Shown: positions 3,836 through 64,000, numbered from the stretch's first letter. The stretch: DNA of 64,000 nucleotides from Octopus sinensis (GCF_006345805.1 NC_043015.1:6882001-6946000), one strand, 5' to 3'. Made by a program: numbers and translations. Notes: a model not told the origin generated them from the letters alone.

Positions 3836-4252
3836 TATTTATCTGTTGCCCGCAGGGAGTTAAACAAAGAGGGACAAACAAGGACAGACAAAGGGATTAA
3901 GTCGATTATATCGACCCCAGTGCGCAACTGGTACTTAATTTATCGATCCCGAAAGGATGAAAGGCAAAGTCGACCTCGGCGGAGTTTGAACTCAGAACGT
4001 AAAGACAGACGATATACCTATTTCTTTACTACCCACATGGGGCTAAACACAGAGGGGACAAACAACAACAGACAAACGGATTAAGTCGATTACATCGACC
4101 CCAGTGCGTAACTGGTACTTATTTAATCGATCCCGAAAGGATGAAATGCAAAGTCGACCTCGGCGGAATTTGAACTGAGAACTTAACGGCAGATGAAATG
4201 CTGCTAAGCATTTCGTCCGGCATGCGAACGATTATGCCAGCTCACCACCGCC
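3836..4252 (-). mobile_element. SINE family A dimer
   Basis: Two body+tail units joined at 4018|4019 (GATATACC|TATTTC on +), with a single tRNA-like head at ~4195-4252. Confidence 0.85.
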
Positions 4253-4999
4253 CTATCATAAACATATATTTAAAAATGTACTATTTGCAAGAATATTCTC
4301 GGTATATCTATTAATACAAATAATCCTATAAAAACTACCATTATTATGGGTGAGCTGCCAGAATTGTTCACATGCCGTCTCAAAATTCATTGTACTTAGA
4401 ACGTCTTTATGTTCTGGGTTCTAATCCCACCGAAGTCGACTTCGTCTTTTATTCTTTCGGAGACGATAAAGTAAGTATCAATACAACGCCGAATTTGATG
4501 GCCATGTGACAAACTTTAAAATTATTATTCATATCAGCAGCAGCAGCATGTTCTACTTATGAGTTTACTTATCATGAGGATTTCTGAATGAAGAGAAAGG
4601 TTTATTGTATATAATATTAAGCATATACGAAAGGCAATCTATATTTCATGGCGTGTCGTTTACAACATTGCTAATCTACTCATAATTTTCTCTCTATCAC
4701 CTCTGATTAAGGCAATCTAAACCTCAATCTACAGTTCACTCTCAACATCTACATATATATATATATCTACATTTAAGATGTACACGCACACATATTTACG
4801 TGTGTCTGTTGTGTCTATGTTTTTATGTGTGTCTATGTGTCTATACACACACCCAAACATATACATATATTTGAGAGTTATGCGTGATGCATGTATATGT
4901 GTGTGCTTGTGTGTATATATATCTATATGTATGTGTGTGTATAGGTTTATTTACATATATATATGTGTGTGTATGTATGTATGTATGTATGTATATATA

Positions 5000-5546
5000 G
5001 TGGACCATCCCATAAATAATGTGCACTTTTTTCAATTGCATGTCCTAAAAGTCGGAGGGAGACCGGATAAACTACTTGAGTCAACTATCTATAAAAGCAG
5101 ATACAAGTTTTGAAGAGTGTAGTTCGATTTTAACAGATATCTTTTTAAAGGTGCATATTCAGCATATTTTGGTTTATGAGTTCAATAAAGGCAACAAAGC
5201 AACAGAAAGTTCGGGGAATATCAATGCAATATATAGGGATCGGACAATCAGAGTAAGCCACTGTCAACGGTGGTTACAGAAATTCAAGTCGGAAACTACA
5301 TCTTCGGAGACGAACCACGTCCTGAAAGATATGTAGAGCTCGACGAGGATGTCCTGCAAACCCTGGTGGAGTAAAATTCCATCTTAATTATTGAGGAACT
5401 TGCAGAGAAGCTTGGATTTGGTCTTTCAACCATTCATCGACACCAACATGACATCTGAAAATCGGCAACTTGGGCAATGGGTTCTTCACAAACGTTCCGA
5501 GTTGAATCTCACACAGAGTGAATGTGTGCTCTTCTCTGCTGTCACG
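5000..5546 (+). mobile_element. mariner (Tc1/mariner) transposon 5' remnant with degenerate transposase N-terminus
   Basis: HIQHILVYEFNKGNKATES..NINAIY...CQRWLQKFK (HTH), then EPRP..VELDEDVLQTLVE*..EELAEKLGF and GQWVLH (5472-5489, WVPH-like motif). A TIR-like 5' end lies near 5000, and the element is truncated at a (TA)n run. Confidence 0.85.
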
Positions 5547-5622
<76 letters not shown>

Positions 5623-6124
5623 CTGTGTAAATTTAAACACATAAGAGATGACCATCATAGGACACCTAACACGCTAGAAGGAGTAACCAAAACTCAAACC
5701 ACTAATAGGGATATATTTCGAAGGGAATGAAAAATATAAACATTCACCATCTATCCCCTGGACCATGGTTTCCCACCCTAAATTAGTAATAAAGTAATTT
5801 GCTAGGCGGAGCTCTCAGCAGCAAGGACGCCAAGATTAACATATAAATACGAGGCAATACAGTGCATGCCTCGTGCTTACATATCATAATTTTTTCATAC
5901 CCACCGCGCAGGCGCAGTTTTTTGTCGGCAGCAAATAAAAATAATGCATACTTGCTTCGAAAATTTGCTAAAAATTATTAATAATACTGTCCTGATATTT
6001 ATTAATGCATATATATGTGTGTGTTTGCGTGTGGAGAAAGAGAGAGAGAGAGAAGGAAAATAATAACAAAATTAGAAAATCTAATATCTGTGATTGCTCA
6101 AGAGATAGATAATATTATTTAAAC

Positions 6125-6481
6125 TTCGAATGTAAGAGTGAAAATGTGCTTTGTAGGTGTAAAGTTACATCAGAAGACAAAAGGAATTTCTACATGTCTC
6201 ACGTATTATTAAACAATGAAAAGCTAATCACGAAAAGTCTTTGAGGACAAGGACAAGGAAATTACACTAGTCTAAGTAAATTAAATTGGTTGCTGAAAGG
6301 TTGTAACAAAATATATTCAATTGGATGGGATATCATTAGTAAGGATAAACCTTATATAATAGGAGGTTAGAGATGCGACTCTTGCGTAGAAGAAATGTAC
6401 CAAATTTTTATTTGTAAATTTAATCCAATAAACACAAGACAAGAACGTGCTCTAAGATGCTTTCATGCAAGTAAGTTGTGA
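6125..6481 (+). pseudogene. Penelope-like element (Naiad-type) GIY-YIG endonuclease / C-terminus remnant
   Basis: Across frames: ECKSENVLCRCKVTSEDKRNFYM; NYTSLSKLNWLLKGCNKIYSIGWDIISKDKPYIIGG*RCDSCVEEMYQI...NTRQERALRCFHASKL. This matches the PLE C-terminal pattern T.LSK.IW.LK...W.I...C..C..E...N.R.E...C.H. Confidence 0.7.
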
Positions 6482-6639
6482 AAACAAGAAGCGAAATTAG
6501 ATCAAACTTGATTGAAAAGCTCTAAACTAAGAATATTCTCTTTGGAATTAGTGTAATGGTAAACTTCTAATAGTAATGACAAATCTATTTTTTTAAAATG
6601 TTTACATTTGGCGGATATTTGTCTTCATGTTGTTTATGC

Positions 6640-10472: not shown

Positions 10473-11984
10473 TAATTATAAGAAATTTTGTTTAAGTTTT
10501 ACCGACAATGGTTCTTTTAACTTACCGAACTACTTGGTAAAATTATTAATTAATTAATTAATTAATTAATTAATTAATTAATTTTTCCCTTTACCATCTA
10601 TCTATCTCTTTTCCGTAACTTTTTTTTCACTTGCGGTACACATATTTTAACTAAAAGCATATCTAAAACTATATGGAAAACTATTATATGTGCTGTCTTT
10701 GTGTATTCAGTTCGTGCATTTAAGAAAATATTCTGAAAGACTGGTAAGGAAATTTGATGCTAAATATCGAGCAATTCCTGGATTACAGATTTCTAAACCT
10801 ACAATATATTCTGCATAGTATGTTCTCTGTCTTTTATACATTCATATACGCACATATATACATATATTGTGTGAACATACGTGTCTGTCTGTCTATGTAT
10901 GTATGTATGTATTTGAGAGATTGCAGTTGTGCTACAGATTAAATCTATTGTAACCAATTACGCATGTGTCGGCTTTCACTTTGCAAGTGTAACTGTGTAT
11001 GGTTGTTCTATATATATATATCTATATATATATATATATATATATATATAGATATATATATATGCATATGTGGTGTATGCGCGTCTTTATGTATGCATAT
11101 TCATACATACATCCATGTATGTTCATTATATATTTTAATATTTGTGAATAGTTTGATAACAATGCATATGTACCTGGGCGAACGTTTGCGCATCAGTGCG
11201 TGTGAGCCAGCATATACGAGATTATCTCCATGTGTTAGCAGGAAGAGGGAACATTATTTATCCCCAGTGAATTGTACGAAGAAATTCGAACGAAGTCCAT
11301 GGCTTTCATTTTGTATCTCATACAAAGAAAGTGTCTTGAAGCCCTCCGAGAGGAAATTCTGTGAATATACTGAGAGAACACATAATAAACTTAGAATGGG
11401 TCTTTCTTTTATATTTATCTAAGCAAATTATATCTGATAAATGAGCGAAGAAATATGCCTGTGCGGTCATTGGCAAAAGTTCACGGTGGTGCCTATTATA
11501 ACAAAGAAAAACCAAAAATGTTTTCAATAGCTTTATCTGCATTGTTGGCGTGGGGAAGCAACGTAAAGACCCTTTCTAAGAATACCGATAATGGGAAGAA
11601 TTCATAACCAAACCGAAGACCTGGGCGGATTTATTTCAATGGTGGACTACACTAAATGCACATATGTCTCTTTTGCTTTTGTAAAATTATAAAATAAATC
11701 TCGTTCTACTGAATATAATTCATCAAAGACACAAGGCTTAAAATTTGTAGGAGAGATTAGTCAATGCTAAAATGCTTCTGCAGTTGACCTTGGAAGTATG
11801 AAGGGCAAAGCTGAGCTTCATGGGATTTGAAATTAGAATGTAAAAAGCCGACAGCAAGATGACGATCTACGATGCATCAGTAAATGCTGTGCATAACAGA
11901 GACATGATACCTAACTATTAATTAGGAGATGGTTATTAGATACTATTGATTTACAATCTTGATACGAGGCCAGCAATTTTGGGA

Positions 11985-13215
11985 GAGAGTATGAGTAAAT
12001 TGCATCGACCCCCAGTGCCCAACTGGTACTTATTTTATCAATCCCAGAAAGATGAAAGCCAAAGAGGACCTTGATGGATTTTGAACTCAGAACGGAAAGA
12101 CGGATGAAATCCGGATAGACATTTTACCCGAAGTGCTAACGATTCCGCCAGCTCGCTACCTTAATAATATTCTTTTCTACTGTAGGCACAAGACCCGAAA
12201 TTGGGGGGAGGGGCCAGTCGATTAGATCGACCCCAGCACGCAACTGGTACTCACTTTCTAGACTCCGAAAGGATGAAAGGCAAAGTCGACCTCGGCGGAG
12301 TTTGAACTTAGGGCGTAAAGATAGACGAAATACCTGCTTCTTTATTACCCACAAGGGGCTAAACATGGAGGGTACCAACAAGGACACACAAACGGATTAA
12401 GTCGATTACATAGACCCCAGTACGTAACTAGTTCTTAATTTATCGACCCCGAAAAGATGAAAGGCAAAGTCGACCTCAGCGGAAATTAAACTCAGAACGT
12501 AACGGCAGACGTTGGAGAGAGAAAGCGTGTCAATTACATCCGGTATGCTAATGACTCTACCAACTCACCGCCTTTAATAACCCCTTTCTAGTATAGGTAC
12601 CATGACTGAAATTGGGGGGGGGGCAGGTAGGGCCTAATCAATTACAACAGTCACAAAGCTCAACAGGTACTTATATTCTTTTCTATTCTAGGTACAATGC
12701 CCTAAATTGGGGGGCATGGGGCCAGCTGATTAGATTGACCCCATTATGCAACTGGTACTTAATTTAATCGACCCCGAAAGGATGAAAGACATAGTCGACC
12801 TCGGCGGAATTTGAACGCAGAACGTAAAGACAGGCGAAATACCTATTTCTTTACTACCCACAAGGGGATAAACACAGAAGAGACAAACAAGGACAGACAA
12901 AAGGGTTAAGTCGATCACATCGACCACAGTGCGTAATTGGTACTTAATTTATCGACCCCGAAAGGATGAAAGGCAAAGTCGACCCCGGCGGAATTTGAAC
13001 TCAGAAGTAACGGCAGACGAAATATCGCTAAGCATTTCGCCCGGCGTGCTAACGCTCATGCCAGATCGCCGCCTTACAACGGCCACTTATATTAGCGAAC
13101 CCGAACGGAAGAAAATCAAAGTCCATACCGGCGGAATTTGAAATTAGAATGTAAAGACGGACTGAAATATCGTTAAGGATATTGTACGGCTTGCTAACGA
13201 CTTTGCCACTTTGCA
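11985..13215 (-). mobile_element. cluster of SINE A-core copies, including two chimeric dimers (12166-12572, 12673-13075)
   Basis: The core GACCCCGAAAGGATGAAAGGCAAAGTCGACCTCGGCGG repeats. Junctions GAAATACC|T lie at 12334 and 12843, and two different tails are present. Confidence 0.85.
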
Positions 13216-13482
13216 GGATTTTCTCAACTTCTTGTAAAAGTAAAGGTAAGTTGATTCGGATGGAATGTGAACTCGATACGTTATGATCTGGAAGAATAAC
13301 TGCAACGCTTAGCACCCGGGGCAGTAAATCTTCTGCCTCTTCACCGCCATTTTGTTGCAATAGAATCGTGATGCGACTTTTATGCTCAGTTGTGTGTGTA
13401 ATGTCGATATCCTCATACGCATGCAATCGATAGAATGGAAGGATCAATGTTCGGTTTACGAGAAGATGGCCAGTTAGATTAT
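13216..13482 (-). CDS. candidate coding exon, product unknown
   Basis: About 89 stop-free codons of non-repetitive sequence follow a plausible acceptor (TTTCTGCATTTGTCAG|). The peptide ...VLSVAVILPDHNVSSSHSIRINLPLLLQEVEKILQ loosely recalls the start of ANF-receptor-type ligand-binding domains. There is no good donor before the SINE at 13215. Confidence 0.2.
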
Positions 13483-15494: not shown

Positions 15495-15594
15495 NNNNNN
15501 NNNNNNNNNNNNNNNNNNNNNNNNNNNNNNNNNNNNNNNNNNNNNNNNNNNNNNNNNNNNNNNNNNNNNNNNNNNNNNNNNNNNNNNNNNNNNN
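15495..15594. other. assembly gap (100 N)
   Basis: Run of exactly 100 n. Confidence 1.
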
Positions 15595-21747: not shown

Positions 21748-22124
21748 TCAAACGGATGTGCTATAACTCTATTCTACATATACTTACATATGTATGCTTA
21801 TATAGACACACACACATATTTATGCACACACACATGTATATGCATATATATACATACACACACATATATGTATATATATAGAGAGAGAGGGGGAGAGAGA
21901 TACTCGTGTATACGCGTGTATATGTAAGGTGCACGATGGTATATGTATACACCCACAAAAATTGAGCTGTATTCTAAATACAAATCTATGGAACAATCAC
22001 CCATCTTCAAGTGAAAAGAATCAGCTATAAGCCGAAAACATGCTGGATGAGAAGGGAAGGAAAAAAGGAATAATAAAAGCATACCAATGACAGGCCCTTT
22101 ACTCACAACGACACAATATATACC

Positions 22125-22357
22125 TATTTCTTTATTACCCACAAGGGGGCTAAACACAGAGGGGACAAACAAGGACAGACATAGGTATTAAGTCGATTAC
22201 ATCGACCCCAGTGCGTAACTGGTACTTAATTTATCGACCCCGAAAGGATAATAGGCAAAGTCGACCTCAGCGAAATTTGAACTCACAACGTAACGCAGAC
22301 GAAATACCGCTAAGCATTTCGCCCGGCGTGCTAACGTTTCTGCCAGCTCGCCGCCTT
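22125..22357 (-). mobile_element. SINE family A monomer with 8-bp TSD
   Basis: Full head-core-tail. TATATACC occurs at 22117-22124 and 22358-22365. Confidence 0.92.
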
Positions 22358-25602: not shown

Positions 25603-25943
25603 CAATGCAAACGTGATGATGTGGTCGAACATAGATACACAAATCTGTCTTTCTCTCTGATTGTCTGTCTGCCCATCTCTCTCAATATCTATTAGTCTGT
25701 CTTTCTATCTATTTATCTATCTGTAGATCAGTCTGTCTGTGTACGTGTGTGTGTGTGCGTGTGTTTGTATATGTCGGGTTTCTTTCCGTTTCTGTGTACC
25801 AAATCCACTCGCAAGTCCTTGGTGGGCCCAAATCTATTGTAAAAGACACTTGCTCATATTCCCACCAAGGGGATTGAACTCCTAAGCATGAGATTTGGAC
25901 ACAAACTTCTTCTCACACAGCAATTATTAACGCTTACATATAT

Positions 25944-26178
25944 ATTTCTTTACTACCCACAAGGGGCTAAACACAGAGAGGACAAACAAGGACAGACAAA
26001 GAGATTAAGTCGATTACATCGACCCCAGTGCGCAACTGGTACTTAATTTATCGACCCCGAAATGATGAAAGGCAAAGTCGACCTCGGCGGAATTTGAACT
26101 CAGAACGTAACGGCAGACGAAAAACGGCCACGCATTTCGCCCGGCGTGCTAACGTTTCTGCCAGCTCGCCGCCTTATC
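25944..26178 (-). mobile_element. SINE family A monomer with 15-bp TSD
   Basis: AACGCTTACATATAT occurs at 25929-25943 and 26179-26193. Confidence 0.92.
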
Positions 26179-26627
26179 AACGCTTACATATATCATAACC
26201 TCCACTTAGCATTCACTTCTAGGATCAAGGAGACAAACTACCCATTGAATTAGGGTGTGATTTGACGGAGCCTACCTCAGAAAGTGTTCCCTTAGAGAGA
26301 ATGTCCCTTAATAAAAGTCAGTGATACATGTTTTAAGGTTGGAATTTGTCTAAGCGGAGCTGAGTAATCCATGGGCTTCGATACAGTTTCTGTTTACCCG
26401 GAATCGTTAAGAATAATTGGATTTAACCTAATAATAGTTTCTCTGGCTCGAGATGAAAAGGAGTGGGGAGTCGAACCCGTCATCTCATGCTTGCGAAATG
26501 AAAATCAAAGCCACATGTATCCACGTTGTGCTTATGTATATACATATCTTTGTGCATATAAACACCTATAGACACATACCGATCACTAGATCAATAAAGT
26601 GAAGGATAGACAGACAGACAGACAGAC

Positions 26628-27128: not shown

Positions 27129-27371
27129 CACGACGGGTTTCTTTCAGTTTCCGTCTACCAAATGCACTCACAAAGCTTTGGTGGACCGAGGCCACTGTAG
27201 AAGACACTTGCCCGAGATGCCAGTGGTCATAAACACAGAAACCCGTACACTATTCAGCACATTCACGCGAACACACCAACTAGCAAAAACTAGTAATTAA
27301 GAAACAATTAATAAAAAAACGAAATGAACCTTCAGGTGCGTCAATCATTTCTTGAACAGAACAGCTCACAA

Positions 27372-27764
27372 TATTATTTTCTACTCTAGGCACAAGGCCC
27401 GAAATTTTGGGGGATGGGGTCAGTCGATTAGCTCGACCCCAGTATGCAAGTGGTACTTAATTTATTGACCTCGAAATGATGAAAGACAAAGTCGATCTCG
27501 GCGGAATTTGAACTCATAACGTAAAGACAGACGAAATACCTATTTCTTTACTACTCACAAGGGGCTAAATACAGAGGGGACAAACAAGGACAGACAAACG
27601 GATTAAGTCGATTACATCGACTCCAGTGCGTAACTGGTACTTAATTATCGACCCCGAAAGGATGAAAGGCAAAGTCAACCTCGCGAATTTGAACTCAGAA
27701 CGTAACGGCAGACGAAATACGGCTACGCATTTCGCCCGGCATGCTAACGTTTCTGCCAGCTCGC
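27372..27764 (-). mobile_element. chimeric SINE dimer (tail-A unit upstream of tail-B unit)
   Basis: Junction GAAATACC|TATTTC at 27540|27541, with one head at ~27715-27764. Confidence 0.85.
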
Positions 27765-37857: not shown

Positions 37858-37894
37858 ATGCGAATCTGCCTATGTGTGCGTGTGAGCACATTCT

Positions 37895-38494
37895 TATTTA
37901 TTGCTCACGAGGGGCTAAACAAAGAGGGGACAAACAAGGACAAGACGAATGGATTAAGTCGATTACATCGACCCCAGTGCCTAACTGGTACTTCATTTAT
38001 CGACCCCGAAAAGATGAAAGGCAAAGTCGACTTCAGCGGAATTTGAACTCAGAACGTAACGGCAGAAGAAATACCTATTTCTTTACTACCCGCAGGGGGT
38101 TAAACAAAGAGGGGACAAACAATGACAAGACAAATGGATTAAGTCGATTACATCGACTCCAGTGAGTAACTGGTACTTAATTTATCGACCCCGAAAAGAT
38201 GAAAGGCAAAATCGACCTCAGCGGAATTTGAACTCAGAACGTAACGGCAGAAGAAATACCTATTTCTTTACTATCAACAAGGGGCTAAACACAGAGGGGA
38301 CAAACAAGGACAGTCAAATGGATTAAGTCGATTATATCGACCCCAGTGCGTAACTGGTAAATATTTAATCGACCCCGAAACGATGAAAGGCAAAGTCGAC
38401 CTCGGCGGAATTTGAACTCAGAACGTAACAGCAAAGGAAATAACGCTAAGCTTTTCGCCCAGCGTGCTAACGTTTCTGCCAGCTCGCCGCCTTA
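37895..38494 (-). mobile_element. SINE family A trimer with 12-bp TSD
   Basis: Junctions at 38075|38076 and 38260|38261. TGAGCACATTCT occurs at 37883-37894 and 38499-38510. Confidence 0.92.
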
Positions 38495-44512: not shown

Positions 44513-46707
44513 TTAATATAAACCATGATCATGTTTTTATATAAATAATTATCTTATTGATATAGATTAATCTTAGGTACATTTATTGTATAATTATATT
44601 CCAAACTAGCTTTTTTTAATCTATGTTTAGAAATTTGTTAACGTTTTTTTTTTCTTTTTGGGTGGGGGCCAGGAATATTCTGTAGTATGTCATCGGATTA
44701 TAAACGTATGATAAGTTTATATTTTGGATCCTAGGGAAATAATGGTTTCGCTTTGCGTAGTTTCGCCTTTAGTTGCACCTGTCAAATTAAGTGAAATAAA
44801 TATCGCAGAGGCTTTGCTTCACGCAGAACTTGTAGGCGTTACTCACAGTTATTACATACTCGTTTGAATCCATCGCAATATCGGTAGCTTTTCCGTATCA
44901 TCAGCAGATATGTCAGGGTCACAGACATTTCGACCCTTAACCTGCACACTTCGCCCGAGGATGGCAGCTAGAATTGAATTATCCTTTGCTTGCGGAAGGG
45001 TTCCACTTTGCAGATGACAAGGTAGTTTGTCAATCACAACTAGCTCGTAATCAACATTTAGCAAAGAATGATTGTGTATAAGTGTGTGTGTATGTGCTTG
45101 TGTGTATGTATGATTGCGTAAATATATATGTATTACACACACACATTGTGTGTGAGAGAGTGTTAGAACGAATTCATATCTACAAACTAACCATATTAGG
45201 TCATCGCTACGCTAGCTTGCGTTTCATTATTAAAATCATTAATTGTGTTAAACCTTTATTGGCGGTAGTTTTGTTCAATCAGTTTTGCTAATTAATTTTA
45301 AATACGAATGTATATATTTGTCATGCTTTAAATGATTTACTGGGGTCGGGGGATGCTGTTTGGTCGGATGACTCTAATTTGACTACACGGGGTTGCAATA
45401 TTAGCATCGAGATTTTAAGTAGCATTCTGCTTTATGTCAATCATAACCTAAATCTAAATGGTCCTACGAAACACACTGCTGAGTGGATACCGAATCAGAC
45501 AAATGCATCAGGAAGTTGCAATTATTCTCTTTTAGAATATATAGGTTATCATCCTCGACATTATTTAACGGAGGAGGAAACCTCATCAAGATCTGCGATC
45601 ATAAGTATTCCAGCCGTGACCATTCCGTTCCCATTCCAACTTTTTATGAGGACGCAAAAACGGCATTATCTGATGTGCGTCGTCATTTTGTATGACAGTA
45701 GTTTCTGGCTTTAATGCAATGGTGTTACTGCCATTTCTAGCGGGTCAAGCACCCTCGTATATATTCCCTTGTTGATTCGCATAGTTTGCGTGTTCTCACA
45801 GAAATATTTTAAGAGCAATACTAAATACATGCCTTTCTAGAGAAATAATTCATTAAAATCTCTCTGGAATATTATGTAATAACTCTATTACCATGCCATA
45901 TAAATTGACTCGATATGAATAGATCGATTGTCAATTTAATGAGAACTCTATTGATCAGTTCTCTTTTTATGAAAAATATTAACATACATATTTTTCATAT
46001 TCATACTAAAATTAATTTTTTTTTCTTTTACCTCTGTAGGCTGACGTCAAAATGAGAAGGCATTTCAATTCAATACATCAAAGTAATATGGAGCTATTTG
46101 TTGAGTTCTCCGACTCACCCTTGCGTATGAAAGAAAGGCCTGGAGCACAATTTGCAACCAAATATATATAAATCCGTTCCAATTTCCGGACCCCACTTCC
46201 TATGATCTTCTCTAGTCTAGGACCAAACTTAATAAAGTCACAACTGCATCCCATTTTCTACCTCCGTTCTTATGAGTTCCTTGACAACACATAATTTAAG
46301 TAACATTCGACATAAACTATTGCTCCTATATTTGAGACGGTGTTCCTCCTGCTAGATCCAGAAATATCATAAGCTAAATAAAATAGCCCATGCTATAGAT
46401 TATTCCCAATGCAACCTTTGGGCTACAACACATTTATCTCTCCAAACAAGCTTCTTCTTCGCTTCTAGAGTGACGTCAATGTTTTTAATCAATTATTTGC
46501 AAATTCTTAATGACAGACACGTTGCACTACGAGCTAGCTGACTCTCCTTTCACTACTGTATTGGTCTCAGCTCTTCCAACTATTTAGTCACAAATACTCG
46601 TTCGTTAACACACTACAACCATTGCGCTACAACTTGTCTTTTCCCTTAGCCTTCTCTATCGCTGTTACACTTGCCCCGTTCTCTGTAGTAGCTGTCTATA
46701 CATTACC

Positions 46708-47490
46708 TATTTCTTTACTACCCACAAGGGGCTAAACACAGAGGGGACAAACAAGACAGACAAACAGATTAAGTCGATTATATCGACTCCAGTGCGTAAC
46801 TGGTACTTATTTAATCGACCCCGAAAAGATGAAAGGCAAAGTCGACCTCGGCGGAATTTGAACTCAGAACGTAGCGGCAGACGAAATTCCTATTTCTTTA
46901 TTACCCACAAGGGGCTAAACTTAGAGGGGACAAACAAGGACAGACAAACGGATTAAGTCGATTATATCGACCCCAGTGTGTAACTGGTATTTATTTAATC
47001 GACTCCGAAAGGATGAAAGGCAAAATCGACCTCGGCGGAATTTGAACTCACAACGTAACGACAGACGAAATACCTATTTCTTTATTACCCACAAGGGGCT
47101 AAACTTAGAGGGGACAAACAAGGACAGACAAACGATTAAGTCGATTATATCGACCCCAGTGTGTAACTGGTATTTATTTAATCGACTCCGAAAGGATGAA
47201 AGGCAAAATCGACCTCGGCGGAATTGAACTCAGAACGTAGCGGCAGACGAAATACCTATTTCTTTATTACCCACAAGGGGCTAAACTTAGAGGGGACAAA
47301 CAAGGACAGACATAGGTATTAAGTCGATTACATCGACCCCAGTGCGTAACTGGTATTTAATTCATCGACCCCGAAAGGATGAAAGGTAAAGTCGACCTCG
47401 GCGGAATTTGAACTCACAAGGTAACGACAGACGAAATACCGCTAAGCATTTCGCCCGGCGTGCTAACGCTTCTGCCAGCTCGCCGCCTTA
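46708..47490 (-). mobile_element. SINE family A tetramer with 12-bp TSD
   Basis: Four ~182-184-bp units with junctions at 46890, 47074 and 47256 and a single head. CTATACATTACC occurs at 46696-46707 and 47494-47505. Confidence 0.95.
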
Positions 47491-47794
47491 TGCCTATACA
47501 TTACCACCACCATTCCACCTCCTACTCATTTTACACATTCTGAGACTCATCCTTCACATGAACTACATCAGCTAAGAAAGCCAACTTCAAGTAAGCGTGC
47601 ATAAGCTGGCTACAAGATGTGGTCTGTGAGATTCCAAGAATAACCTTACATAGATGATATTCATTTGTGATGATCGTAGCTTGCAGCTATTTTGCTTTTC
47701 TACATTGTCATTGCCATTTATAATCATAGATTTATTCAGAAGAATGTATTGGTACAAACGATAGATCATTGAACAAAATGTCTCACGGCACTCT

Positions 47795-49206: not shown

Positions 49207-50870
49207 TATTATTATTTATCCCATTCGTTCACTCAATGAAAATACACTTGTTTCGTATTGTTTTTTTTATTATGCCTTTCCCCTGTAAACTCTTCTTGAT
49301 ATCTTGACATTTGCGACCAATGAAAGAAATCAATAGTGTTACCGGGGAAGGTTTAGCAGAAACGTCAGAGCGTCTGGCAATGTTTTGATCTAATTGTTTC
49401 GGCACTTTTGGTCCTGAGTTCAATTTGCCACGAGACAAACATCAACAGTCATTTATCAGGGGCCAATAAAATAAATGCAGTCGAGCGAAGACGTCGAATT
49501 AATCGACAGTTTCTCTCCTTGAAATATTCTAGTCAAGAAATATAAACAATATGATTTAGATCTGCGATGTGGCAGAACAGCTGTGGAGTCAGACAAAAGA
49601 TACATGTGAATATTTATTCCGGTTCTTTACAATCTGAAATCAACTCGCATCGGTAACAGTTTTTCTTTTCTTCCCTAGGGGTACATACAATAAAGCAGCA
49701 GTCATGTATGAAGCAACGGTGATTGGTAGTACCCTCACAAGAGAATATAGGACCTTGTGCCTAACTTAGATACTCTTGGCACAGTCGTTTGAGCGCCGCT
49801 CAAAATGTCTTGCATTATTTATTCCGGCTCAGTAGGATCTGCATTCAAATCCTAACGAGTTGAGCTTTCAATAGTAGCAGTAAAATATTGAGTCGCTTCA
49901 ACACATCAGTGAAATATGTAACTTTTTTTTTTTTGATAAGTGTTTCTCCCCCGTTACTTAGCCTCTCTGTAACGATTTCATGTGATTAGTAGAAGAGAAA
50001 ATTGAAGAGCGAGAGAAAAGAGGGGGAGAAAGAAAAGGATAGACAGAGAACGAAGATAAAGCAAAGACTGAAAGGGGAAGAGTGCTGTATATTAAGTCTA
50101 TAACATTGTGAATAGCGTATATAAAGTGTATATATAATGTGCCTTCAGTATTCATCATATTCCAATTTCCTTCACTTTTCAACGAGTAGCAGATGCATTA
50201 CACTTTCAGATTTTTGGATAAAGTTTTCAGAAATATCTCAATAAATTCACCATTAATTCCGAAAAAAACTATCCACGGTTCCCGATAGTCATTATTATTA
50301 ATATTATGAATCCGGGGAACTGGCAGAATCGTTAGCACACCGGGCAAAATGATCAGGGGCATCTCATCCGTCCTAAGCCATCTGAGTTAAAATTCTCCCG
50401 GGGTCAACTTTACCTGTCTTTCTTTCGGGCTCGATAAAATAACTATCAGTTAAACACGGGCATCAACGTAATCACCTCACCTCCTACATCGAAATAGCTA
50501 GTTTCGTACCAAATTTAAAACCAAAACCAAAACCACCATCATCATCATCATCATCATTATCATTGAGGCAACGAGCTGGCAGAATCGTTAGCACGCTGGA
50601 TGAAATGCTTAGCGGTATTTCGCCCGTCGCTACGTTCTGAGTTCGAATTCCACCGAGGTCAACTTTGCCTTTCATCCTTTCGGGGTCGATAACTTAAGTA
50701 CCAGTTGAACACTGGAGTCTATGAACACTGGAGTCTATGTAATCGATTAGTCCCCTCCCCCAGAATTTCTGCCCTTGTGGCAAAATTTGTAAATATAATT
50801 ATTAATATTATTAATTTTTAATGATAATAGCAATATTATTATTATTACTATTAATAGTAATAATTAATTG

Positions 50871-51048
50871 TGAAGGTGCATAGCTCAGTGGTTGGAGCGT
50901 CGAGTTTACGATTGTGAGGTTGTGAGTTCGATTCCCGGTATGCATGGGCAACTACTGGCCTTCCACAATCAACCTTGCGCAGACTTGTGCCTCGGAGGGT
51001 AACTTTCTAGGTGCAATCCCATGGTCATTTATGACTGAAGGGGTTTCA
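50871..51048 (+). mobile_element. further tRNA-derived SINE (internally shortened)
   Basis: A box TAGCTCAGTGG and B box GAGTTCGATTCC, followed by a non-tRNA body ending CCCATGGTCATTTATGACTGAAGGGG. Confidence 0.6.
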
Positions 51049-54490: not shown

Positions 54491-55109
54491 AATAATAATG
54501 ATAATCCTTTCTACTATAGGTACAAGTCCTGACATTTTGGAGGAGACTGTAAATCGATTACACCGGGCCTGAGTAATTAAGTGGTCTTTATGCTATCGAT
54601 CCCGAAAGAATAAAAGGCAAAGTCGACCTCGGTGGAGTTTGAACGCAGAACGTAAAGACAGGCGAAATCCCGCTATCGATACTGTCAGCTCGCCGCCTTT
54701 ATAAAAAAAACACAACAACAACAGCACCAGTGTTTGTAAGAGTACTTAGAAGGATTAAAAAACTATCTTATTTCAGAATGATCCCTGACTTACCATTCAT
54801 GCATGCAGGAGTGCAAAAGATTGTTTTGAGTAGTACGAAACACGTATTGAGAAAAGTATCGTCACTGAATGTTCTTTCCGTTTCATCCCCTTTCTTTGTT
54901 GTCTTGTTTCTTTTCTATTTGTTCATTTTTCCTTTTTCTCTTTCTTTCTTTCTTTTCTTTTTCTTTCTCTATCACCTATCTTGACTTTGTAAATGAAAAT
55001 CTGGTGTGTTTATTTTAATTACCTACGAATGTATACATTGGAGTTCGTTTTGCCGTAGGTATAGGGAAGACACTCGGGAAGAAATGGAACAAAATTGAAA
55101 GAAGAAACA

Positions 55110-55375: not shown

Positions 55376-55933
55376 GCTAAAAGAGGAAGAATCCTATAGA
55401 TATTTTGCCAGTGTTAAATTGTGTTTGTCATTGCTTTGATGATCATCACAATATCTTGATTCACAATATACCTGACAATTCATTCTTGAACGTCGTTCCT
55501 TCAATGCGATTAAGACTTCTAAGTTATTTAAAGAAGATAAACTACTTTCTGCAAACAATTCACTTTCATGATAAAATAAAATCCAATTCACCCGAGCGGT
55601 GTCAGCGGTTTCAATGACATTTGCTATCTACTTTTCCATTTTGTCTTCTGTTATTTACCATGACCAGGCGTTGAGCTGGTGGAATCTTCAGTGCGTCGGA
55701 AAAATCGCTTAGTGGGATTTCTTCCGGCATTTTTCAAATTTGCCTTTCGTCCACGCAGGGTCGATCAAAGAAACATCAGTCGAGCACTAGGGTCAATGTT
55801 AACCACTCATTCACACATACACACTCACACACAGACTAACACACACCATATTACAAACACACAAACTCACAAACAAACACATGCACAAATTTAAGCCTTG
55901 TACCCATTGCACAAGGCGTCAGAATCGTTAGCG

Positions 55934-56344
55934 GTGAGCTGGCAGATACGTTAGCACACAAGGCGAACTGCTTAGCGGTATTTCGTCTGCCGTTACATTC
56001 TAAATTCAAATTCCGCCGAGGTCGACTTAGTCTTTCTTCCTTTCGGGGTCGATTAGATGAGTACCAGTTACGCACTGGGGTCGATATAATCGACTTAACC
56101 CGTTTGTCTGTCCTTCTTTGTCCCCTCTATGTTTAGCCCCTTGTTGGTAGTAAAGAAATAGGTATTTCGTCTGCCGTTACGTTCTGAGTTCAAATTCTGC
56201 CGAGGTCGACTTTGCCTTTCATCATTTCAGGGTCGATAAATTAAGTACCAGTTACGCACTGGGGTCGATGTAATTGACTTCATCCCTTTGTCTAACCTTG
56301 TTTCTCACCTCTGTGTGAAGCCCCTTGTGGGCAATAAAGAAATA
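55934..56344 (+). mobile_element. SINE family A dimer nested in an older SINE head
   Basis: Junction GAAATA|GGTATTTC at 56160|56161. TSD ATCGTTAGCG occurs at 55924-55933 and 56345-56354, and an older SINE head/core continues at 56345-56470. Confidence 0.85.
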
Positions 56345-57854
56345 ATCGTTAGCGCAGAGGCCAAAATGCTTAGCCACATTTCTTCTGGCTTTACATTCTA
56401 AGTTCAAATTTTGGCAACGTAGACGTTGTCCCCTCCTCTTTTCGGTGTCTATAAAATAAGCAACTGTTAAATACTGGGTGAGATCTAATGGGCTAGCTCC
56501 CCCTACCGACACACCACAACACATCAGGCTTTGTAACCAAAACGAAAAGAGTTATTTTGTCTAACACAAACAACCCATACACAGATATACGGATACACAC
56601 TTATTGACCCCCATTACTTTCTTGTGTCACTCTAAATTATAGTAGGATTTAAGTATTATTTTCCCTAAATTCCTTCAGCCACAAAAATTGCAAAGAGAAG
56701 CTATGTAATTATTTTTGTCTGTAGTACTGATGCAAAGTTTGCTAAAGAAATATAATGGTGAATCCTATATGTTGGAAAGCTATATGTTCATCTGCTCCGA
56801 GGAGAGAGGTGTATTTCAAATTGGCGTAACTTTTTCATTGATCGATTAAATGGAGCCGTTTGAAACGGCCGTAATGCACTGATACCTGGACATCCTTGAT
56901 ACTTACTTGCTTTTTATTCACCTAACTTCGAGCTACGCGGTACATAGGTATAGAAATAAATATTTAGATATTCATACATGCTTGTACACTTATTATGTAT
57001 GTTCTATCATTTACCGTTTACTTGTTGCAGTCATTGGATGACAGCTATGCTGGGACAGCGGCTTCAAGGGATTTTAGTCAAACAATTTCGATCCCAGTAC
57101 TTATTTTTAAAGCTTAGTACTAATTCTATAGGTCCCTTTTATTGAACCACTATGTTACGGGAACGTAAAACAATTCGGATAGTCAGGTAGCGGTGAAGGA
57201 CAAATATCACTGAAAAACACACACACACACACACTACCACAGATGGAAACACACATAAACGATGAGCTACTTTTAGTTTCCGTTCAAGAAATCCGTTCAT
57301 ATGATTTAAGCTGGCGGTGTACTATATTAAATGACACTAAGCCTAGGTACCTCACACACTGTGGGACTGAACCCAAACTCACAGGCTTGAGGACCAAACT
57401 TCCTAACCACACAGCTATCCTTGCGTCGAAATATCTGCTCACTTTCTTATTATATGTTAGCTAGACAATGAACTTCGGAAATACTTCGCAAAAAATAAGT
57501 AGAATGTGGTAACATTTCCGACACATTTCACCATATTTCAAAGGAGTGGGTTAACTTGTGAAAGCATTCTGTGACGCCGAAGGAGCGCATTCTGTTAAAT
57601 TCATTTTACATCAATGATATTGCGGATTTCCTTTACGATCCTATGTCTATTTTATTAATTCCGACGTACAAGTATTCTTCATATTTTGTTCTCCTCTCTG
57701 ACACACCCCGTTTAATCTCTCACTACCCCCTACTCTCTCCCTCCCTTTTTCTATCTTTCTCCATTCTCTCTGTCGCTGCTTCTACATCTCTTTCACACTC
57801 ATACATTTTTTTAAGGAAAATAAAATGAGGCTAGTAACATCCTATTAATTTACA

Positions 57855-61100: not shown

Positions 61101-61482
61101 TGGAAGCACTCCGTCGATTACCACGACGAGGGTTCCGGTTGATCCGATGAACGGAACAGCCTGCTCGTGAAATTAACGTGTAAATGGCTGAGCACTCCAC
61201 AGACACGTGTACCCTTAACGTAGTTCTCGGGGATATTCAGCGTGACACAGAGAGTGACAAGGCCGGCCCTTTGAAATACAGGTACAACAGAAACAGGAAG
61301 TAAGAGTGAGAGAAAGTTGTGGTGAAAGAGTACAGCAGGGATCACCACCATACCCTGCCGGAGCCTCGTGGAGCTTTAGGTGTTTTCGCTCAATAAACAC
61401 TCACAACGCCCGGTCTGGGAATCGAAACCGCGATCCTACGACCGCGAGTCCGCTGCCCTAACCACTGGGCTATTGTGCCTCC
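61101..61482 (-). mobile_element. SINE family C, full length
   Basis: Near-identical architecture to 19830-20210. The approximate TSD is TCGGGAATTAT (61085-61095) / TCGGGGATTAT (61483-61493). Confidence 0.9.
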
Positions 61483-62003
61483 TCGGGGATTATATGTGTA
61501 TCTGTCTAATATTAGAATAGAAAATATTCTATTATTCAATCCATAATATAATAGAGACTGAGACAGGAACAATTTTAATGAAATACTTAGAATGCACATA
61601 ATATACCATACCGTAATACTGGACACGCTCCAGATAGGTAGCGAAAATCTTTAATAGAAATTCTGCTGGAACTAACCTAAAGATGTTTGAACGATATAAG
61701 ATCGTAGATTTCTTACTAAACTCCAAAATTATACGTACTAAACATCTGTGTAAACGTAAAATAGACTGTAGAAATAGAACTAAATGCTACTCTTTGTGGA
61801 AAGTTTTAACGTACTGTCCCGTTGGAAAATTTGTATATGGCTCGAAATAGGCGTACAGGATTAACAAAGAATGCGGCTTCGTTACACAGAAGCTAGAGCA
61901 ATTCAACATCATAATTAAAATATGTTTATTACAATAAAATGTAGCATTACTGGCAGTAATTTTAATTTCCGAATCCTTAAACGGTATATTCTGCGCTCAA
62001 CCC

Positions 62004-62037
<34 letters not shown>

Positions 62038-62062
62038 CGATAGATAGATAGATAGATAGATA

Positions 62063-64000
62063 ACTTTCTTTTATTAGCCACACAGGGCTGAATACAGAGG
62101 GGACAAATACAAATGCAGAGCTTTTCTTTTCGAGGGTGGAAAAAAATAAAAAATGTAAGATTGCGATCAAAAGGGATCGAAAGGAGGAAAAAAAAGGAAA
62201 AAAAAGAAAATCGTGTATCACAGAAATAATGGTGTAAACATTGATATAACAAGATTGGGTTCATCCGTGGGAAGAAAAGCCTACAGAAAAGACCACGGGA
62301 ACCCCAGTCAGGGAGGAAATAAACACATGAGGTCAAAAATGCTCTCTTTCTTTCTTTTTTACGATCTACAGGATCATGCTCAAAATGGTTTCGTTACTAG
62401 CACGCACCATCTTTGCAACATTCACCCATCTTTTTTTGAATCTTTCGCGAGACAAAACTTCCCTCTCCATTCTCACCTTCCTTTTCAAGTGGTACTTGAA
62501 AAAGTTGATGAGCGATTGGCCAGAGAGGTAAGTGTTTGTCTCTAATCCTTTCGCTCGAGTCCACCACACACATTCTTTCACCATGGCCACCAGTACGATG
62601 AAAACTGCCTTGCCTTCCGGTTGAGGGAAGGGGGCGGAGCAATTCTCACGATAGACTCGGCCGATAGGCGGATTCGTCCCACACGTGACAGCAGCCGTTC
62701 GGCATAAGCCCACAGGTCGGAAATGGTTGGACATTGCACGAGTGCGTGCAGAACGGTTTCGTCGCTCTGACCGCATCTCGGGCAAGTCGGTCCAGTGTGT
62801 CTGGAACCGTGTCTGTAGAGCTTATCCCGAACAGGTAATGCTTCTCGATAGCACTGCCAGGCCAGGGATCTTTGGTGATTGTTCATAGGTCCCGGCCCGA
62901 AAGTTGTCCTGAACAGGCGGGTCAGGTGTTCCTCGTCGACGCCCAGACTCTGCCCGAGTTCGTCGTCGCACCTCCCCTCCTCTAATCCTCTATAGAATGC
63001 CTTTGTTGTGATGGAGTCGCACAAGTTCGATCCCGGACGGCAGAGTTGCTTGAGAGCAACGCGACACTCGCGGTGCCATTCGCCTAGCCTCGGTCTCTGC
63101 TTGATCCATGACTGTAGTTCGTCCAAGGAGACGAGCTGCGGGAAAGCGCGCCGCACAAAAGGCGACCACCCCTGTTCACCGTTGTCTATGAAGCGCCGGA
63201 GATGTCGCAGTCTCAGCGCATGTCTGCGCATCATCAACCACGGCATGCCCAGCCCTCCATTTAGCGGGTGTTGGCAGCAAATGGATCGCCTAACCATCGG
63301 AACGTTTCCCTTCCACAAGAAGCGGAAGAGTATGGGTTCCAGTTTGGTGATGGTAGGGTCGGGACAAGGCACGACGGTCAGACGATACTCGATGACGGAT
63401 GCGATGTACGCGTTCGCCACCTCCGCCCGACCTTTTAGGGATAGCTTTCTCTCAGTCCATTTCTGGGTGAGAGTAGCCACCCTAGTCGTTATCTCGCCCC
63501 AGTTCTTCTCCATTTGGAGGTCCGGACCGAACCAGACCCCGAGCAATTTAACCGGTCCGTCCGTCCAGCGTCCCACGATGGAGACGCTGTTGGACGGCAT
63601 GGGCTTGCTTCTCCAGGTGCCGAGCCGCAAGCCCACTGACTTTTCCCGGTTAATTTTTGCTCCCGTTACCGCTTCGTATTCTTTCAGTGTCTCGCCGACC
63701 AGCTCGATGTGCTCGTAGCTCGACACTATTACGGTGACGTCATCCGCGTATGCAGACACGCTCCTCCCGCATCCCAGCTCTCGTGGGATGCCCCTCAGCG
63801 TCGCCAGTTTCCGCAGTAGTGGCTCAAGAGTCAGTACATACAGCAGCGATGAGAGGGGGCATCCCTGACGAACCGAACGCATGATGTTAAAAGGTCTGGA
63901 TAGATGACCATTTACGCGAACTACTGAGCGGATGCCGCTGTATAAGGCAGCGATCCAACCGCGGAAAACTGGACCGAAACCAGCCGCTTTGAGGGCAGCC
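62063..64000 (-). mobile_element. L1/Tx1-clade LINE, 3' portion (continues beyond window)
   Basis: RT ORF2 plus a ~300-bp 3' UTR ending AATAAAAGAAA followed by (TCTA)n. It is GC-rich relative to its surroundings. Confidence 0.92.
62366..63999 (-). pseudogene. LINE ORF2 (reverse transcriptase + zf-RVT), one apparent frameshift near 62600-62620
   Basis: RQGCPLS, YADDV, GAKINREKS, GGLG and CPRCGQSDETVLHALVQC (CCHC). The frame is open from the window end to 62578, and the natural C-terminus (KGKAVFIVLVAMVKECVWW...KRWVNV) is in another frame ending at 62366. Confidence 0.88.

What the first reader, a model, noticed from the sequence alone, without database searches (positions are those of the whole stretch)
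3836..62107. Candidate self-targeting SINE system: a Tx1-tailed SINE that inserts into its own tRNA-derived head
Seen: 10 multimer junctions of SINE A (after 4018, 12334, 12843, 27540, 38075, 38260, 46890, 47074, 47256, 56160) all fall at the same nucleotide of the head. In SINE sense this is tail-end GAAATA followed by GGTATTTCGTC, and each array keeps only one head. Seen: the SINE tail matches the 3' end of the Tx1-clade LINE in this window. Established: Tx1-clade LINEs include sequence-specific families targeting small-RNA genes and microsatellites (e.g. Keno, Dewa, Kibi, Koshi). Inference: the LINE machinery nicks the SINE head at GGTA, the new cDNA is resolved by annealing to the homologous old head, and head-(body-tail)n arrays grow in place as a SINE-seeded satellite. 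I do not know of this being described for octopus, but I cannot check that.
Basis: partly seen in the sequence, partly recalled or inferred. Interest (0 to 1): 0.85.

Follow-up and report, generated by a model that had tools for sequence, protein, structure and literature searches.

The report
SINE arrays joined at one head nucleotide
An octopus short retrotransposon (SINE) is repeatedly found as short head-(body-tail)n arrays whose units are always joined at one nucleotide inside the element's own promoter-bearing head, which points to a retrotransposition-coupled self-joining process, not ordinary DNA duplication.

Summary
All 10 junctions join the complete 3' end of SINE A (…AAAGAAATA) to position 55 of the 238-nt element (GGTATTTCG…). 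Each of the 7 arrays (2-4 units) has one head, and whole arrays are flanked by a single target-site duplication. The junction formed at least 7 times independently. Neighbouring units are usually no more alike than unrelated copies, and three arrays join a SINE A unit to a sister SINE with a different tail. Only A6 and part of A5 show local duplication. Position 55 is the boundary between the loop and the 3' arm of a 13-bp head hairpin. Joining correlates with GGTA at 55-58, and 2 of 5 ordinary SINE A insertions also start their target duplication with GGTA. The tail matches L1-like LINE 3' ends here and in O. sinensis; "Tx1 clade" could not be tested. Best reading (about 0.45): integration at GGTA in resident heads, with the 5' side resolved by homology. 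Main rival (about 0.3): one-step multimers made by reverse-transcriptase template switching at position 55. The window cannot separate sequential from simultaneous formation. "Satellite" overstates 2-4 units. No prior description was found.

The parts
3836..4249 (-). Array A1: 2 SINE A units, head at the 4249 side, junction after 4018 (GAAATA|GGTATATCG)
   Evidence: the two units differ at 26 of about 180 positions
12164..12575 (-). Array A2: a SINE A unit with a rearranged head, then a position-55-truncated unit with tail B; junction after 12334. It is part of a longer SINE chain at about 11940-13330
12677..13076 (-). Array A3: full SINE A unit, then a position-55-truncated B-tailed unit; junction after 12843. 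Flanked by a 16-nt TSD (12661-12676 and 13077-13092) inside another SINE
22125..22357 (-). Monomer M1 (SINE A), TSD GGTATATA at 22117-22124 and 22358-22365
25944..26178 (-). Monomer M2 (SINE A), TSD ATATATGTAAGCGTT at 25929-25943 and 26179-26193; head reads CGTT at positions 55-58
27366..27764 (-). Array A4: SINE A unit (head starts at consensus position 12, same subfamily as M2), then a position-55-truncated B-tailed unit; junction after 27540
37894..38494 (-). Array A5: 3 SINE A units, junctions after 38260 and 38075. Unit 1 is a different subfamily from units 2 and 3. 16-nt TSD at 37879-37894 and 38495-38510 (1 mismatch)
46708..47493 (-). Array A6: 4 SINE A units, junctions after 47256, 47074 and 46890. 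TSD GGTAATGTATAG at 46696-46707 and 47494-47505. Units 2 and 3 differ at only 5 positions, which indicates local duplication or conversion
55931..56344 (+). Array A7: 2 SINE A units of different subfamilies, junction after 56160. TSD AATCGTTAGCG at 55923-55933 and 56344-56354. Inserted in the head of another SINE, not at position 55
62065..64000 (-). 3' part of an L1-type LINE (RT C-terminal half plus zf-RVT ORF at 62578-63999, 3' UTR, and a tail resembling the SINE A tail). It runs off the window end
50566..50790 (+). Solitary B-like SINE with an intact, unoccupied GGTATTTCG at position 55 (example of a free target)

Best explanation
SINE A is a roughly 238-nt non-autonomous retrotransposon. 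It has a head with Pol III box-like motifs, a core body shared with several sister SINE families, and a roughly 45-nt tail copied from an L1-type LINE. Its integration machinery prefers targets that begin with GGTA. The best such site is GGTATTTCG at position 55 of the SINE superfamily's own head, exactly where the tetraloop meets the 3' arm of a 13-bp hairpin. Proposed steps (inferred): the bottom strand of a resident SINE (family A or B) is nicked at position 55. The SINE A RNA is reverse transcribed from its 3' end (…GAAAUA). Because the new cDNA is homologous to the resident head just upstream of the nick, the 5' side is sealed by annealing rather than by ordinary end joining. This leaves one head followed by body-tail, body-tail, and the original outer TSD. 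Repetition gives 2-4-unit arrays, and unequal exchange or conversion later duplicates or homogenises some units (A6, part of A5). Shown: the anatomy, the recurrence, the GGTA association, the single TSDs and the LINE-like tail. Inferred: nicking of resident DNA at position 55, stepwise timing, and the homology-based 5' resolution.
For: 1) The junction is identical in 10 of 10 cases, and the upstream partner always ends at the same nucleotide as de novo SINE A 3' ends. That fits a retrotransposition-type join, not DNA slippage. 2) At least 7 joins are independent. Within-array distances are A1 26, A7 29 and A5u1-u2 22 differences, against a between-array mean of 22. Arrays mix subfamilies. Three are A|B heterodimers whose downstream unit is B-type from positions 64-68 onward. 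3) All 10 upstream partners carry tail A, although B, C and other tails are about as common in the window (p about 0.001-0.004). B-type tails are never joined to position 55. 4) Target motif: 9 of 10 occupied sites read GGTA. Of unoccupied heads of the superfamily, 5 read GGTA and about 19 do not (Fisher p about 2e-4). 5) Independent support: 2 of 5 resolvable de novo SINE A TSDs start with GGTA (M1, A6), where GGTA frequency is 0.0028 per position (p about 8e-5). 6) The same tail family in Argonauta hians is followed by CTAT in most copies, and TSDs prove the motif is often in the target. Short-motif target choice is therefore a property of this LINE/SINE tail lineage. 7) Three rearranged heads have breakpoints abutting position 55, compatible with DNA breakage there. 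8) Known precedent: Tx1-type SINEs and LINEs that prefer a site inside another repeat and make tandem copies by sequential insertion (PMC4494074).
Against: No age gradient was seen. 5' units are not younger than 3' units by private-substitution counts, and A/B partners have similar divergence. Position 55 is used about 70-160 times more often per site than generic GGTA or GGTAW sites in the window, so a 4-5-nt motif alone is not enough; an add-on such as the hairpin, RNA-target pairing or homology-assisted completion must be assumed. Ten of 10 joins are seamless, with no sandwiched TSD, no duplicated head and no truncated insert. In 4 of 7 arrays the head-adjacent site is not GGTA (A1 AGCA, A3 GATA, A4 CGTA, A5 GTTA). 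The A4 head matches the incoming SINE A subfamily (same as M2), so the resident head must often be replaced. The two LINE 3' flanks seen do not start with GGTA. Zero-spacer tail-to-head SINE chains in this window and in Argonauta suggest that template jumping is common in these genomes. All evidence comes from one 64-kb window.
Confidence: 0.45

Rival explanations
1. One-step multimers by reverse-transcriptase template switching. During a single TPRT event the RT copies a SINE RNA (A or B) from its tail up to G55. It then switches to the 3' end of a SINE A RNA, possibly docked by pairing of its GAAAUA end with UAUUUC at positions 57-62. This can repeat until one template is read through to its 5' end. 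The whole multimer integrates with one TSD.
For: It gives exactly the observed anatomy: one head, complete internal units, a seamless 5' side and a single TSD. Units of an array look the same age. It needs no genome-wide targeting. It predicts that read-through (first) units are enriched for non-GGTA variants, and 6 of 9 are. The tail end GAAATA is complementary to TATTTC at 57-62, and position 55 sits at the top of the hairpin's 3' arm. Zero-spacer tail-to-5'-end chains of different SINEs occur here (11940-13330) and in Argonauta (L123:4890-5362, where spacers equal the RNA 3' extension CTATT rather than a 10-16-nt TSD). These point to frequent template jumping by related RTs. Chimeric retrocopies of the U6-L1 type are an established precedent (own knowledge; cited within PMC4494074).
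Against: It does not explain why 2 of 5 de novo TSDs begin with the same GGTA. No solitary copy starts at G55, and no array lacks a head. Switching would therefore have to be about 100% efficient at position 55, yet tail A is never joined to a native SINE 5' end (0 of 9). Tail type and junction type are tightly linked: A to position 55 in 10 cases and never to a 5' end, B to a 5' end in 3 cases and never to position 55. Generic end-to-end jumping does not predict this. No reason is known for an RT to stop at the loop after it has already unwound the stem. For heterodimers, the RT that initiated on a B tail would have to pick only A acceptors.
Confidence: 0.3
2. The junction was made once or a few times in a dimeric or composite master SINE and is inherited. 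Arrays are copies of multimeric Pol III read-through transcripts, with RT initiating at different internal tails, and copy-choice recombination shuffles the units.
For: The unit has no TTTT run, so Pol III could read through arrays (sequence). Junction-flanking sequence is nearly invariant. Twelve of 15 A tails are followed by GGTA, so most read-through RNAs would carry GGUA after the tail, which could also bias priming toward GGTA sites.
Against: Arrays combine different subfamilies in different orders: beta|alpha, delta|beta, alpha|B three times with different A heads. In all three heterodimers the B-type sequence starts within 9-13 nt of position 55. Homologous copy-choice over the 118-nt shared region would give this with p about 0.001. 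Initiation at internal tails can only shorten arrays. Unit number varies from 1 to 4.
Confidence: 0.1
3. Purely DNA-level tandem duplication (unequal crossing-over or replication slippage) of a single SINE, as proposed for TSD1-(SINE)n-TSD1 arrays in the clam S. broughtonii and for SINE-derived satellites in squamates.
For: A6 units 2 and 3 differ at only 5 of about 180 positions and show a mosaic pattern. A5 units 2 and 3 share private variants. Published cases exist (PMC11481361; PMC10702118).
Against: Neighbours are as divergent as random pairs in A1, A7 and A5u1/u2. Three arrays are heterodimers with different tails. The junction keeps the complete tail to its last nucleotide, whereas the bivalve arrays have truncated tails. 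There is no microhomology at the breakpoint that would give this join; the shared GAAAT would put it 7 nt upstream (sequence). It therefore explains later growth of some arrays, not the origin of the junction.
Confidence: 0.03
4. Rolling-circle or ribozyme-based amplification (a retrozyme-like circular RNA of the 184-nt unit copied into multimers).
For: Tandem units of about 184 nt, as in non-LTR retrozymes (bioRxiv 10.64898/2026.07.22.740005, listed).
Against: No hammerhead, HDV-like or any other Rfam family matches the arrays, even at E up to 10. Units of one array are mostly different sequences. Every array carries a head that a 55-238 circle could not supply.
Confidence: 0.02

Closest known systems
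SINEU / Tx1-Mar in crocodilians (Kojima 2015, PMC4494074)
   Same: Non-autonomous elements mobilised by L1/Tx1-type LINEs. They prefer a defined site inside another interspersed repeat, and tandem copies arise by repeated insertion at that site.
   Different: There the target lies in an unrelated DNA transposon, tandem copies sandwich a TSD, and each keeps its own 5' end. Here the site lies in the SINE's own head (and in sister families), joins are seamless, and only one head survives.
Tx1L inserting into Tx1D, and Keno, Kibi, Koshi and Mutsu (Kojima & Fujiwara 2004; Christensen et al. 2000, as cited in PMC4494074)
   Same: L1-like LINE lineages whose endonuclease selects specific sequences in multicopy DNA.
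   Different: Those are autonomous LINEs with long, strict targets. Here only a 4-5-nt motif plus context is evident, the LINE copies seen are not at that site, and clade membership is untested.
Chimeric retrocopies made by RT template switching (U6-L1 or U6-Alu type; Buzdin et al., own knowledge)
   Same: Two or more RNA-derived modules in tandem within one TSD. The upstream module ends at its RNA 3' terminus.
   Different: In those chimeras the downstream module is truncated at variable positions. Here it is always truncated at position 55, and the acceptor is always the same tail.
TSD1-(SINE)n-TSD1 arrays in the clam Scapharca broughtonii (PMC11481361) and SINE-derived satellites in squamates (PMC10702118)
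   Same: SINE multimers with one complete head at the 5' end, inside a single TSD. They show that SINEs can seed tandem repeats in molluscs.
   Different: Those internal units have truncated tails, are highly similar, and are attributed to unequal recombination. Here tails are complete, neighbours are mostly dissimilar, and heterodimers occur.
R1Bm/R2-type use of target-homologous 3' read-through RNA for precise priming (Anzai et al. 2005; Eickbush lab; own knowledge, partly cited in PMC4494074)
   Same: Because 12 of 15 A tails are followed by GGTA, read-through RNA could pair with nicked GGTA targets. The Argonauta data show such 3'-extension microhomology for this tail family.
   Different: Not shown here. 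SINE A RNA 3' ends are unknown.

Membership tests
LINE-mobilised (stringent-type) SINE | 3' tail derived from a partner LINE 3' end | tested here: met
   84% identity over 43 nt to the window LINE and 86% to an O. sinensis LINE 3' end. A small hairpin with loop (C)TTGT is kept through compensatory stem changes: CCC/GGG, GGC/GCC, AGCC/GGCT
LINE-mobilised (stringent-type) SINE | Flanked by variable target-site duplications | tested here: met
   TSDs of 8-16 nt for M1, M2, A3, A5, A6 and A7
LINE-mobilised (stringent-type) SINE | tRNA-derived head with Pol III A and B boxes | tested here: inconclusive
   B-box-like GAGTTCAAATTCC and A-box-like GAGCTGGCAGAA are present about 63 nt apart. ARAGORN and Rfam (including tRNA) find nothing.
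Target-specific Tx1-clade system | RT groups phylogenetically with the Tx1 clade | not testable with these tools
   Only the C-terminal RT half is in the window. It has RVT_1 and zf-RVT, and its best solved relatives are human LINE-1 ORF2p (E about 1e-15), well ahead of R2. No Tx1 reference set is available. The literature reports L1-Tx1 families in Octopus.
Target-specific Tx1-clade system | More than 20% of copies flanked by one kind of target sequence (criterion used in PMC4494074) | tested here: met
   Ten of 15 A-tail 3' ends abut position 55 of a SINE head, and 12 of 15 abut GGTA. This is one window only.
Target-specific Tx1-clade system | The autonomous LINE copies sit at the same target | tested here: not met
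   The window LINE 3' flank is TTATC(TATC)n and the O. sinensis LINE flank is TGGATG. With only n=2, and neither likely the actual partner, this is weak.
Target-specific Tx1-clade system | Tandem copies sandwich a TSD | tested here: not met
   All 10 joins are seamless, with no duplicated segment or second head
Template-switch chimeric retrocopy | One TSD around the whole chimera; upstream module ends at its RNA 3' end | tested here: met
Template-switch chimeric retrocopy | Downstream module truncated at variable positions | tested here: not met
   Always position 55
SINE-derived satellite | Long, homogenised tandem arrays | tested here: not met
   Arrays have 2-4 units, and neighbours are mostly no closer than random pairs
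Non-LTR retrozyme / ribozyme tandem repeat | Self-cleaving ribozyme in each unit | tested here: not met
   No Rfam hit at E up to 10 in array A6, and none at gathering score in the window

The most novel reading that the evidence does not exclude
A SINE whose preferred integration site lies in the loop/stem boundary of a hairpin in its own head, shared by sister families. Each new copy lands in an older copy, borrows its head by homology, and builds head-(body-tail)n arrays by retrotransposition rather than recombination. This would be a self-targeting SINE and a retrotransposition route from interspersed to tandem DNA. It may be guided by pairing between the tail end (GAAAUA) and the target (TATTTC).
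Probability: 0.4. Interest if true: 0.75.

Novelty: new variant of a known kind. Interest (0 to 1): 0.6.

Why it matters
SINEs make up more than 10% of octopus genomes (PMC13282606). If this family preferentially integrates into its own head, three things follow. It would be a natural example of a mobile element using itself as a safe landing site. It would give a mechanistic, retrotransposition-based origin for SINE-derived tandem repeats, which are usually attributed to unequal recombination. It would also offer a compact, sequence-defined target (a 13-bp hairpin with GGTA) for studying how L1/Tx1-type machinery chooses sites and how the 5' junction is sealed by homology. If the template-switch reading is right instead, it would be an unusually precise, sequence-programmed RT switch, which is informative for LINE RT biochemistry. 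Either way, repeat annotation of octopus genomes should treat these arrays as structured products, not as fragmented SINE hits.

Tried and rejected
Attempts to sample the genome more widely mostly failed.
- An exact-pattern scan of metagenome contigs with the 21-nt tail returned two chance hits.
- A 16-nt tail pattern in viral contigs returned only chance hits.
- A protein search with the antisense ORF that spans the junction found nothing.
- The window LINE has no identical or near-identical protein on record; the best hit is 76%.
- A second search with the O. sinensis LINE protein gave 7 hits.
- The O. sinensis locus L001 holds no SINE A array.
- Short JGI and ENA contigs stop before the LINE 3' end.

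Other checks that led nowhere or were negative.
- No host gene was found in the window that could lead to an orthologous locus.
- Rfam and ARAGORN found no tRNA or ribozyme.
- Searching papers for sequence strings of the SINE core gave nothing relevant.
- The filler sequences in the rearranged heads are unique.
- No outer TSD was found for the 11940-13330 SINE chain.

Hypotheses rejected.
- Rolling-circle or retrozyme origin.
- Pure unequal crossing-over.
- Homologous copy-choice onto multimer RNA at the hairpin base, because A3u2 already carries a B-type variant at position 64.
- Recombination at the GAAAT microhomology, because it would place the junction at the wrong position.

Full report
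**Observation.** The ten junctions are real. In SINE sense each reads …GTAGTAAAGAAATA | GGTATTTCGTCTGCCG…. Three have small variants: GAAGCA after 12334, GGTATATCG after 4018, GGAATTTCG after 46890. TRF reports periods of 183-185 nt.

A 238-nt consensus was taken from array A6: a 54-nt head-specific part plus a 184-nt unit. With it, blastn finds nine SINE A loci.
- Seven arrays: A1 3836-4249, A2 about 12164-12575, A3 12677-13076, A4 27366-27764, A5 37894-38494, A6 46708-47493, A7 55931-56344.
- Two monomers: M1 22125-22357 and M2 25944-26178.

Every internal unit starts at consensus position 55. Every upstream partner runs to position 238. Only the first unit of each array has positions 1-54. 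The assembly gap at 15495-15594 lies in unrelated sequence and touches none of this.

**Anatomy.** Whole arrays are flanked by one target-site duplication:
- A6: GGTAATGTATAG.
- A5: AGAATGTGCTCA(G/C)ACG.
- A7: AATCGTTAGCG.
- A3: ATATAAGTRSCYGTTG.
- The monomers have GGTATATA (M1) and ATATATGTAAGCGTT (M2).

The window holds many sister SINEs that share the head and core body but carry other tails. In A2, A3 and A4 the downstream unit begins at position 55 and carries tail 'B'. It is B-type from positions 64-68 onward.

The head folds into a 13-bp hairpin, positions 38-50 paired with 55-67, with tetraloop UAGC at 51-54 (ΔG -19.5 kcal/mol, z -2.9). The junction is therefore exactly the boundary between the loop and the 3' arm. 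After joining, the tail end GAAAT pairs with ATTTC to give a weaker mimic of that hairpin.

ARAGORN and Rfam detect no tRNA and no ribozyme. The 'tRNA-derived' label rests only on box-like motifs.

**The LINE.** The ORF at 62578-63999(-) has RVT_1 and zf-RVT. Among solved structures it is closest to human LINE-1 ORF2p. Relatives occur in Argonauta hians (64%) and Octopus sinensis.

Its 3' end is …TTTGTCCCCTCTGTATTCAGCCCTGTGTGGCTAATAAAAGAAAG. An O. sinensis LINE ends …CCCTTGTGGCTAATAAAGAAAT. Both resemble the SINE A tail. Tx1-clade membership could not be tested. Published octopus repeat surveys list L1-Tx1 families and abundant SINEs but describe no such arrays.

**Is it local duplication?** Mostly not. 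Pairwise differences over positions 59-238 are 26 for A1u1/u2, 29 for A7u1/u2 and 22-27 for A5u1 against u2 and u3. The between-array mean is 22. Only A6u2/u3 (5 differences), and more weakly A5u2/u3 (19), are each other's nearest relatives.

Arrays mix recognisable subfamilies. A6u1 groups with monomer M1. The A4u1 head matches M2. A5 and A7 pair a 'TTAAATAAG/GATATAATC' unit with a 'TAAATTAAG/GATGTAATC' unit. Counting the three A|B heterodimers, at least seven junctions formed independently.

The upstream partner always ends at the same nucleotide as de novo 3' ends. The join is therefore made during retrotransposition, not by DNA slippage. Recombination at the shared GAAAT microhomology would place the breakpoint 7 nt upstream.

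**What correlates with joining?**
- All ten upstream partners carry tail A, though other tails are about as frequent (p about 0.001-0.004).
- Occupied sites read GGTA in 9 of 10 cases. Among unoccupied heads of the superfamily, 5 read GGTA and about 19 do not (Fisher p about 2e-4).
- Two of five resolvable de novo SINE A TSDs begin with GGTA, which has a frequency of 0.0028 per position (p about 8e-5).
- In two Argonauta loci, the same tail type is followed by CTAT in most copies. TSDs such as CTATTTCAAGGAA and CTATTATCTTTSTGCC show the motif is usually in the target. One case shows part of it coming from the RNA, which indicates 3'-extension microhomology.

Short-motif target choice is therefore a property of this tail lineage.

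**Mechanism.** TPRT starts at GGTA at position 55 of a resident A or B head, and the 5' side is resolved by homology with that head. Later unequal exchange or conversion occurs in some arrays. This explains four things: the tail-A exclusivity, the GGTA requirement, the GGTA TSDs, and three rearranged heads whose breakpoints abut position 55 (43998, 54550, A2u1).

Its weak points are these.
- There is no 5'-younger age trend. Private substitutions and A/B partner divergences look equal within arrays.
- Per site, position 55 is used about 70-160 times more than generic GGTA(W) sites. Something beyond a 4-nt motif is needed: the hairpin, pairing of GAAAUA with TATTTC, or homology-assisted completion.
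- Four of seven arrays have a non-GGTA head-adjacent site, and the A4 head is of the incoming subfamily. The resident head must often be replaced.
- The two LINE flanks seen lack GGTA.

**Main rival.** One-step multimers could form by RT template switching at G55 onto the 3' end of a SINE A RNA. This yields the same structures and fits the equal ages.

It gains plausibility from zero-spacer tail-to-5'-end chains of different SINEs in this window. At 11940-13330, a B-like tail abuts the A2u1 head, and the A2u2 tail B abuts the head of a C-type SINE. It also gains from tandem full-length SINEs in Argonauta, joined by only CTATT or CCATTT (L123:4890-5362).

It fails on three points.
- It does not explain the GGTA TSDs.
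- No solitary copy starts at G55 and no array lacks a head.
- Tail type and junction type are strictly paired: A to position 55 in 10 cases and never to a 5' end; B to a 5' end in 3 cases and never to position 55.

Three other readings are disfavoured: an inherited junction from a composite master (different subfamily combinations; B-type sequence within 9-13 nt of position 55 in 3 of 3 heterodimers, p about 0.001), pure unequal crossing-over, and retrozyme-like rolling circles.

**Comparison with known systems.** The closest is SINEU/Tx1-Mar in crocodilians. It is a Tx1-mobilised SINE that prefers a site in another transposon and forms tandem copies by sequential insertion, but with sandwiched TSDs and a foreign target.

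TSD1-(SINE)n-TSD1 arrays in a clam and squamate SINE satellites look similar. They differ in having truncated tails and near-identical units, and they are ascribed to recombination.

I found no description of a SINE joined recurrently at a fixed nucleotide of its own head.

**Verdict.** The self-targeting interpretation is plausible and partly supported, but sequential versus simultaneous formation is unresolved from one window. 'Satellite' and 'Tx1' are not established. Novelty: a new variant of target-preferring LINE/SINE systems. Interest 0.6.

Noticed in passing
window 11940-13330 (- strand): A same-orientation chain of SINEs from different families with zero-spacer joins. SINE 'E' (B-like tail …GGGGTTATT) abuts the head of A2u1. 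The A2u1 tail A joins position 55 of A2u2. The A2u2 tail B (…ATTATT) abuts the head of a C-type SINE (12004-12163). E is itself split by the A3 heterodimer. No outer TSD was found. B-type tails join SINE 5' ends; A tails join position 55.
   Followed up: partly
L123:4890-5362 (Argonauta hians), also L123:3156, 13297, 13816, 13973: Three tandem full-length copies of a small tRNA-like SINE with the same tail type, joined as tail+CCATTT/CTATT+5' end. About 6 of roughly 28 tails in 43 kb are followed within 0-16 nt by a SINE 5' end. This suggests frequent template jumping or re-targeting in this LINE lineage.
   Followed up: partly
L122 and L123 (Argonauta hians), all tail ends: The A-like tail (…GGCTAATAGAGAAAT) is followed by CTAT in most copies. 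TSDs show CTATT is usually target-derived, but at L123:14207-14356 the CT is not part of the TSD, pointing to a 3' RNA extension and microhomology priming. CTATT is the reverse complement of AATAG in the tail, just as TATTTC is of GAAATA in the window.
   Followed up: partly
window 43930-44050 (+); 54550-54700 (-); 12512-12575 (-): Three SINE heads are rearranged with a breakpoint next to position 55. One has a 41-nt unique filler replacing positions 36-52 in a head-only fragment that ends at about position 96. One has a deletion of about positions 27-49. One has a 20-nt filler replacing positions 48-61 (A2u1). These could be scars of breaks at the site or instability of the hairpin.
   Followed up: partly
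window 62000-62064: The LINE 3' end (…AATAAAAGAAAG) is followed by TTATC(TATC)5 CGA (GATA)7, an inverted pair of tetranucleotide repeats in the same unit family as the Argonauta CTAT motif. The LINE 5' end is outside the window, so a microsatellite target cannot be tested.
   Followed up: no
window, all SINE A loci: Eight of 9 SINE A loci are on the minus strand (only A7 is plus), while sister families occur on both strands. This may reflect an orientation bias within a transcription unit.
   Followed up: no
SINE A tail about positions 210-232; tail B; LINE tails (window 62065-62110; L001:11027-11069): A small hairpin with loop (C)TTGT is preserved with different stems: CCC/GGG in A, GGC/GCC in B and the O. 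sinensis LINE, AGCC/GGCT in the window LINE. This looks like compensatory change in an RT-recognition element. The thermodynamic signal alone is weak.
   Followed up: partly
window 22442-22821: Two sister SINEs lie head-to-head as an inverted pair (22442-22616 minus, 22656-22821 plus) separated by about 40 nt, next to further SINEs at 22925-23225. This is a dense SINE pile-up adjacent to monomer M1.
   Followed up: no
window 50890-50960 (+): A different, clearly tRNA-like head (…GCATAGCTCAGTGGTTGGAGCG…GAGTTCGATTCCC) belongs to another SINE family or a tRNA pseudogene. ARAGORN does not call it.
   Followed up: no
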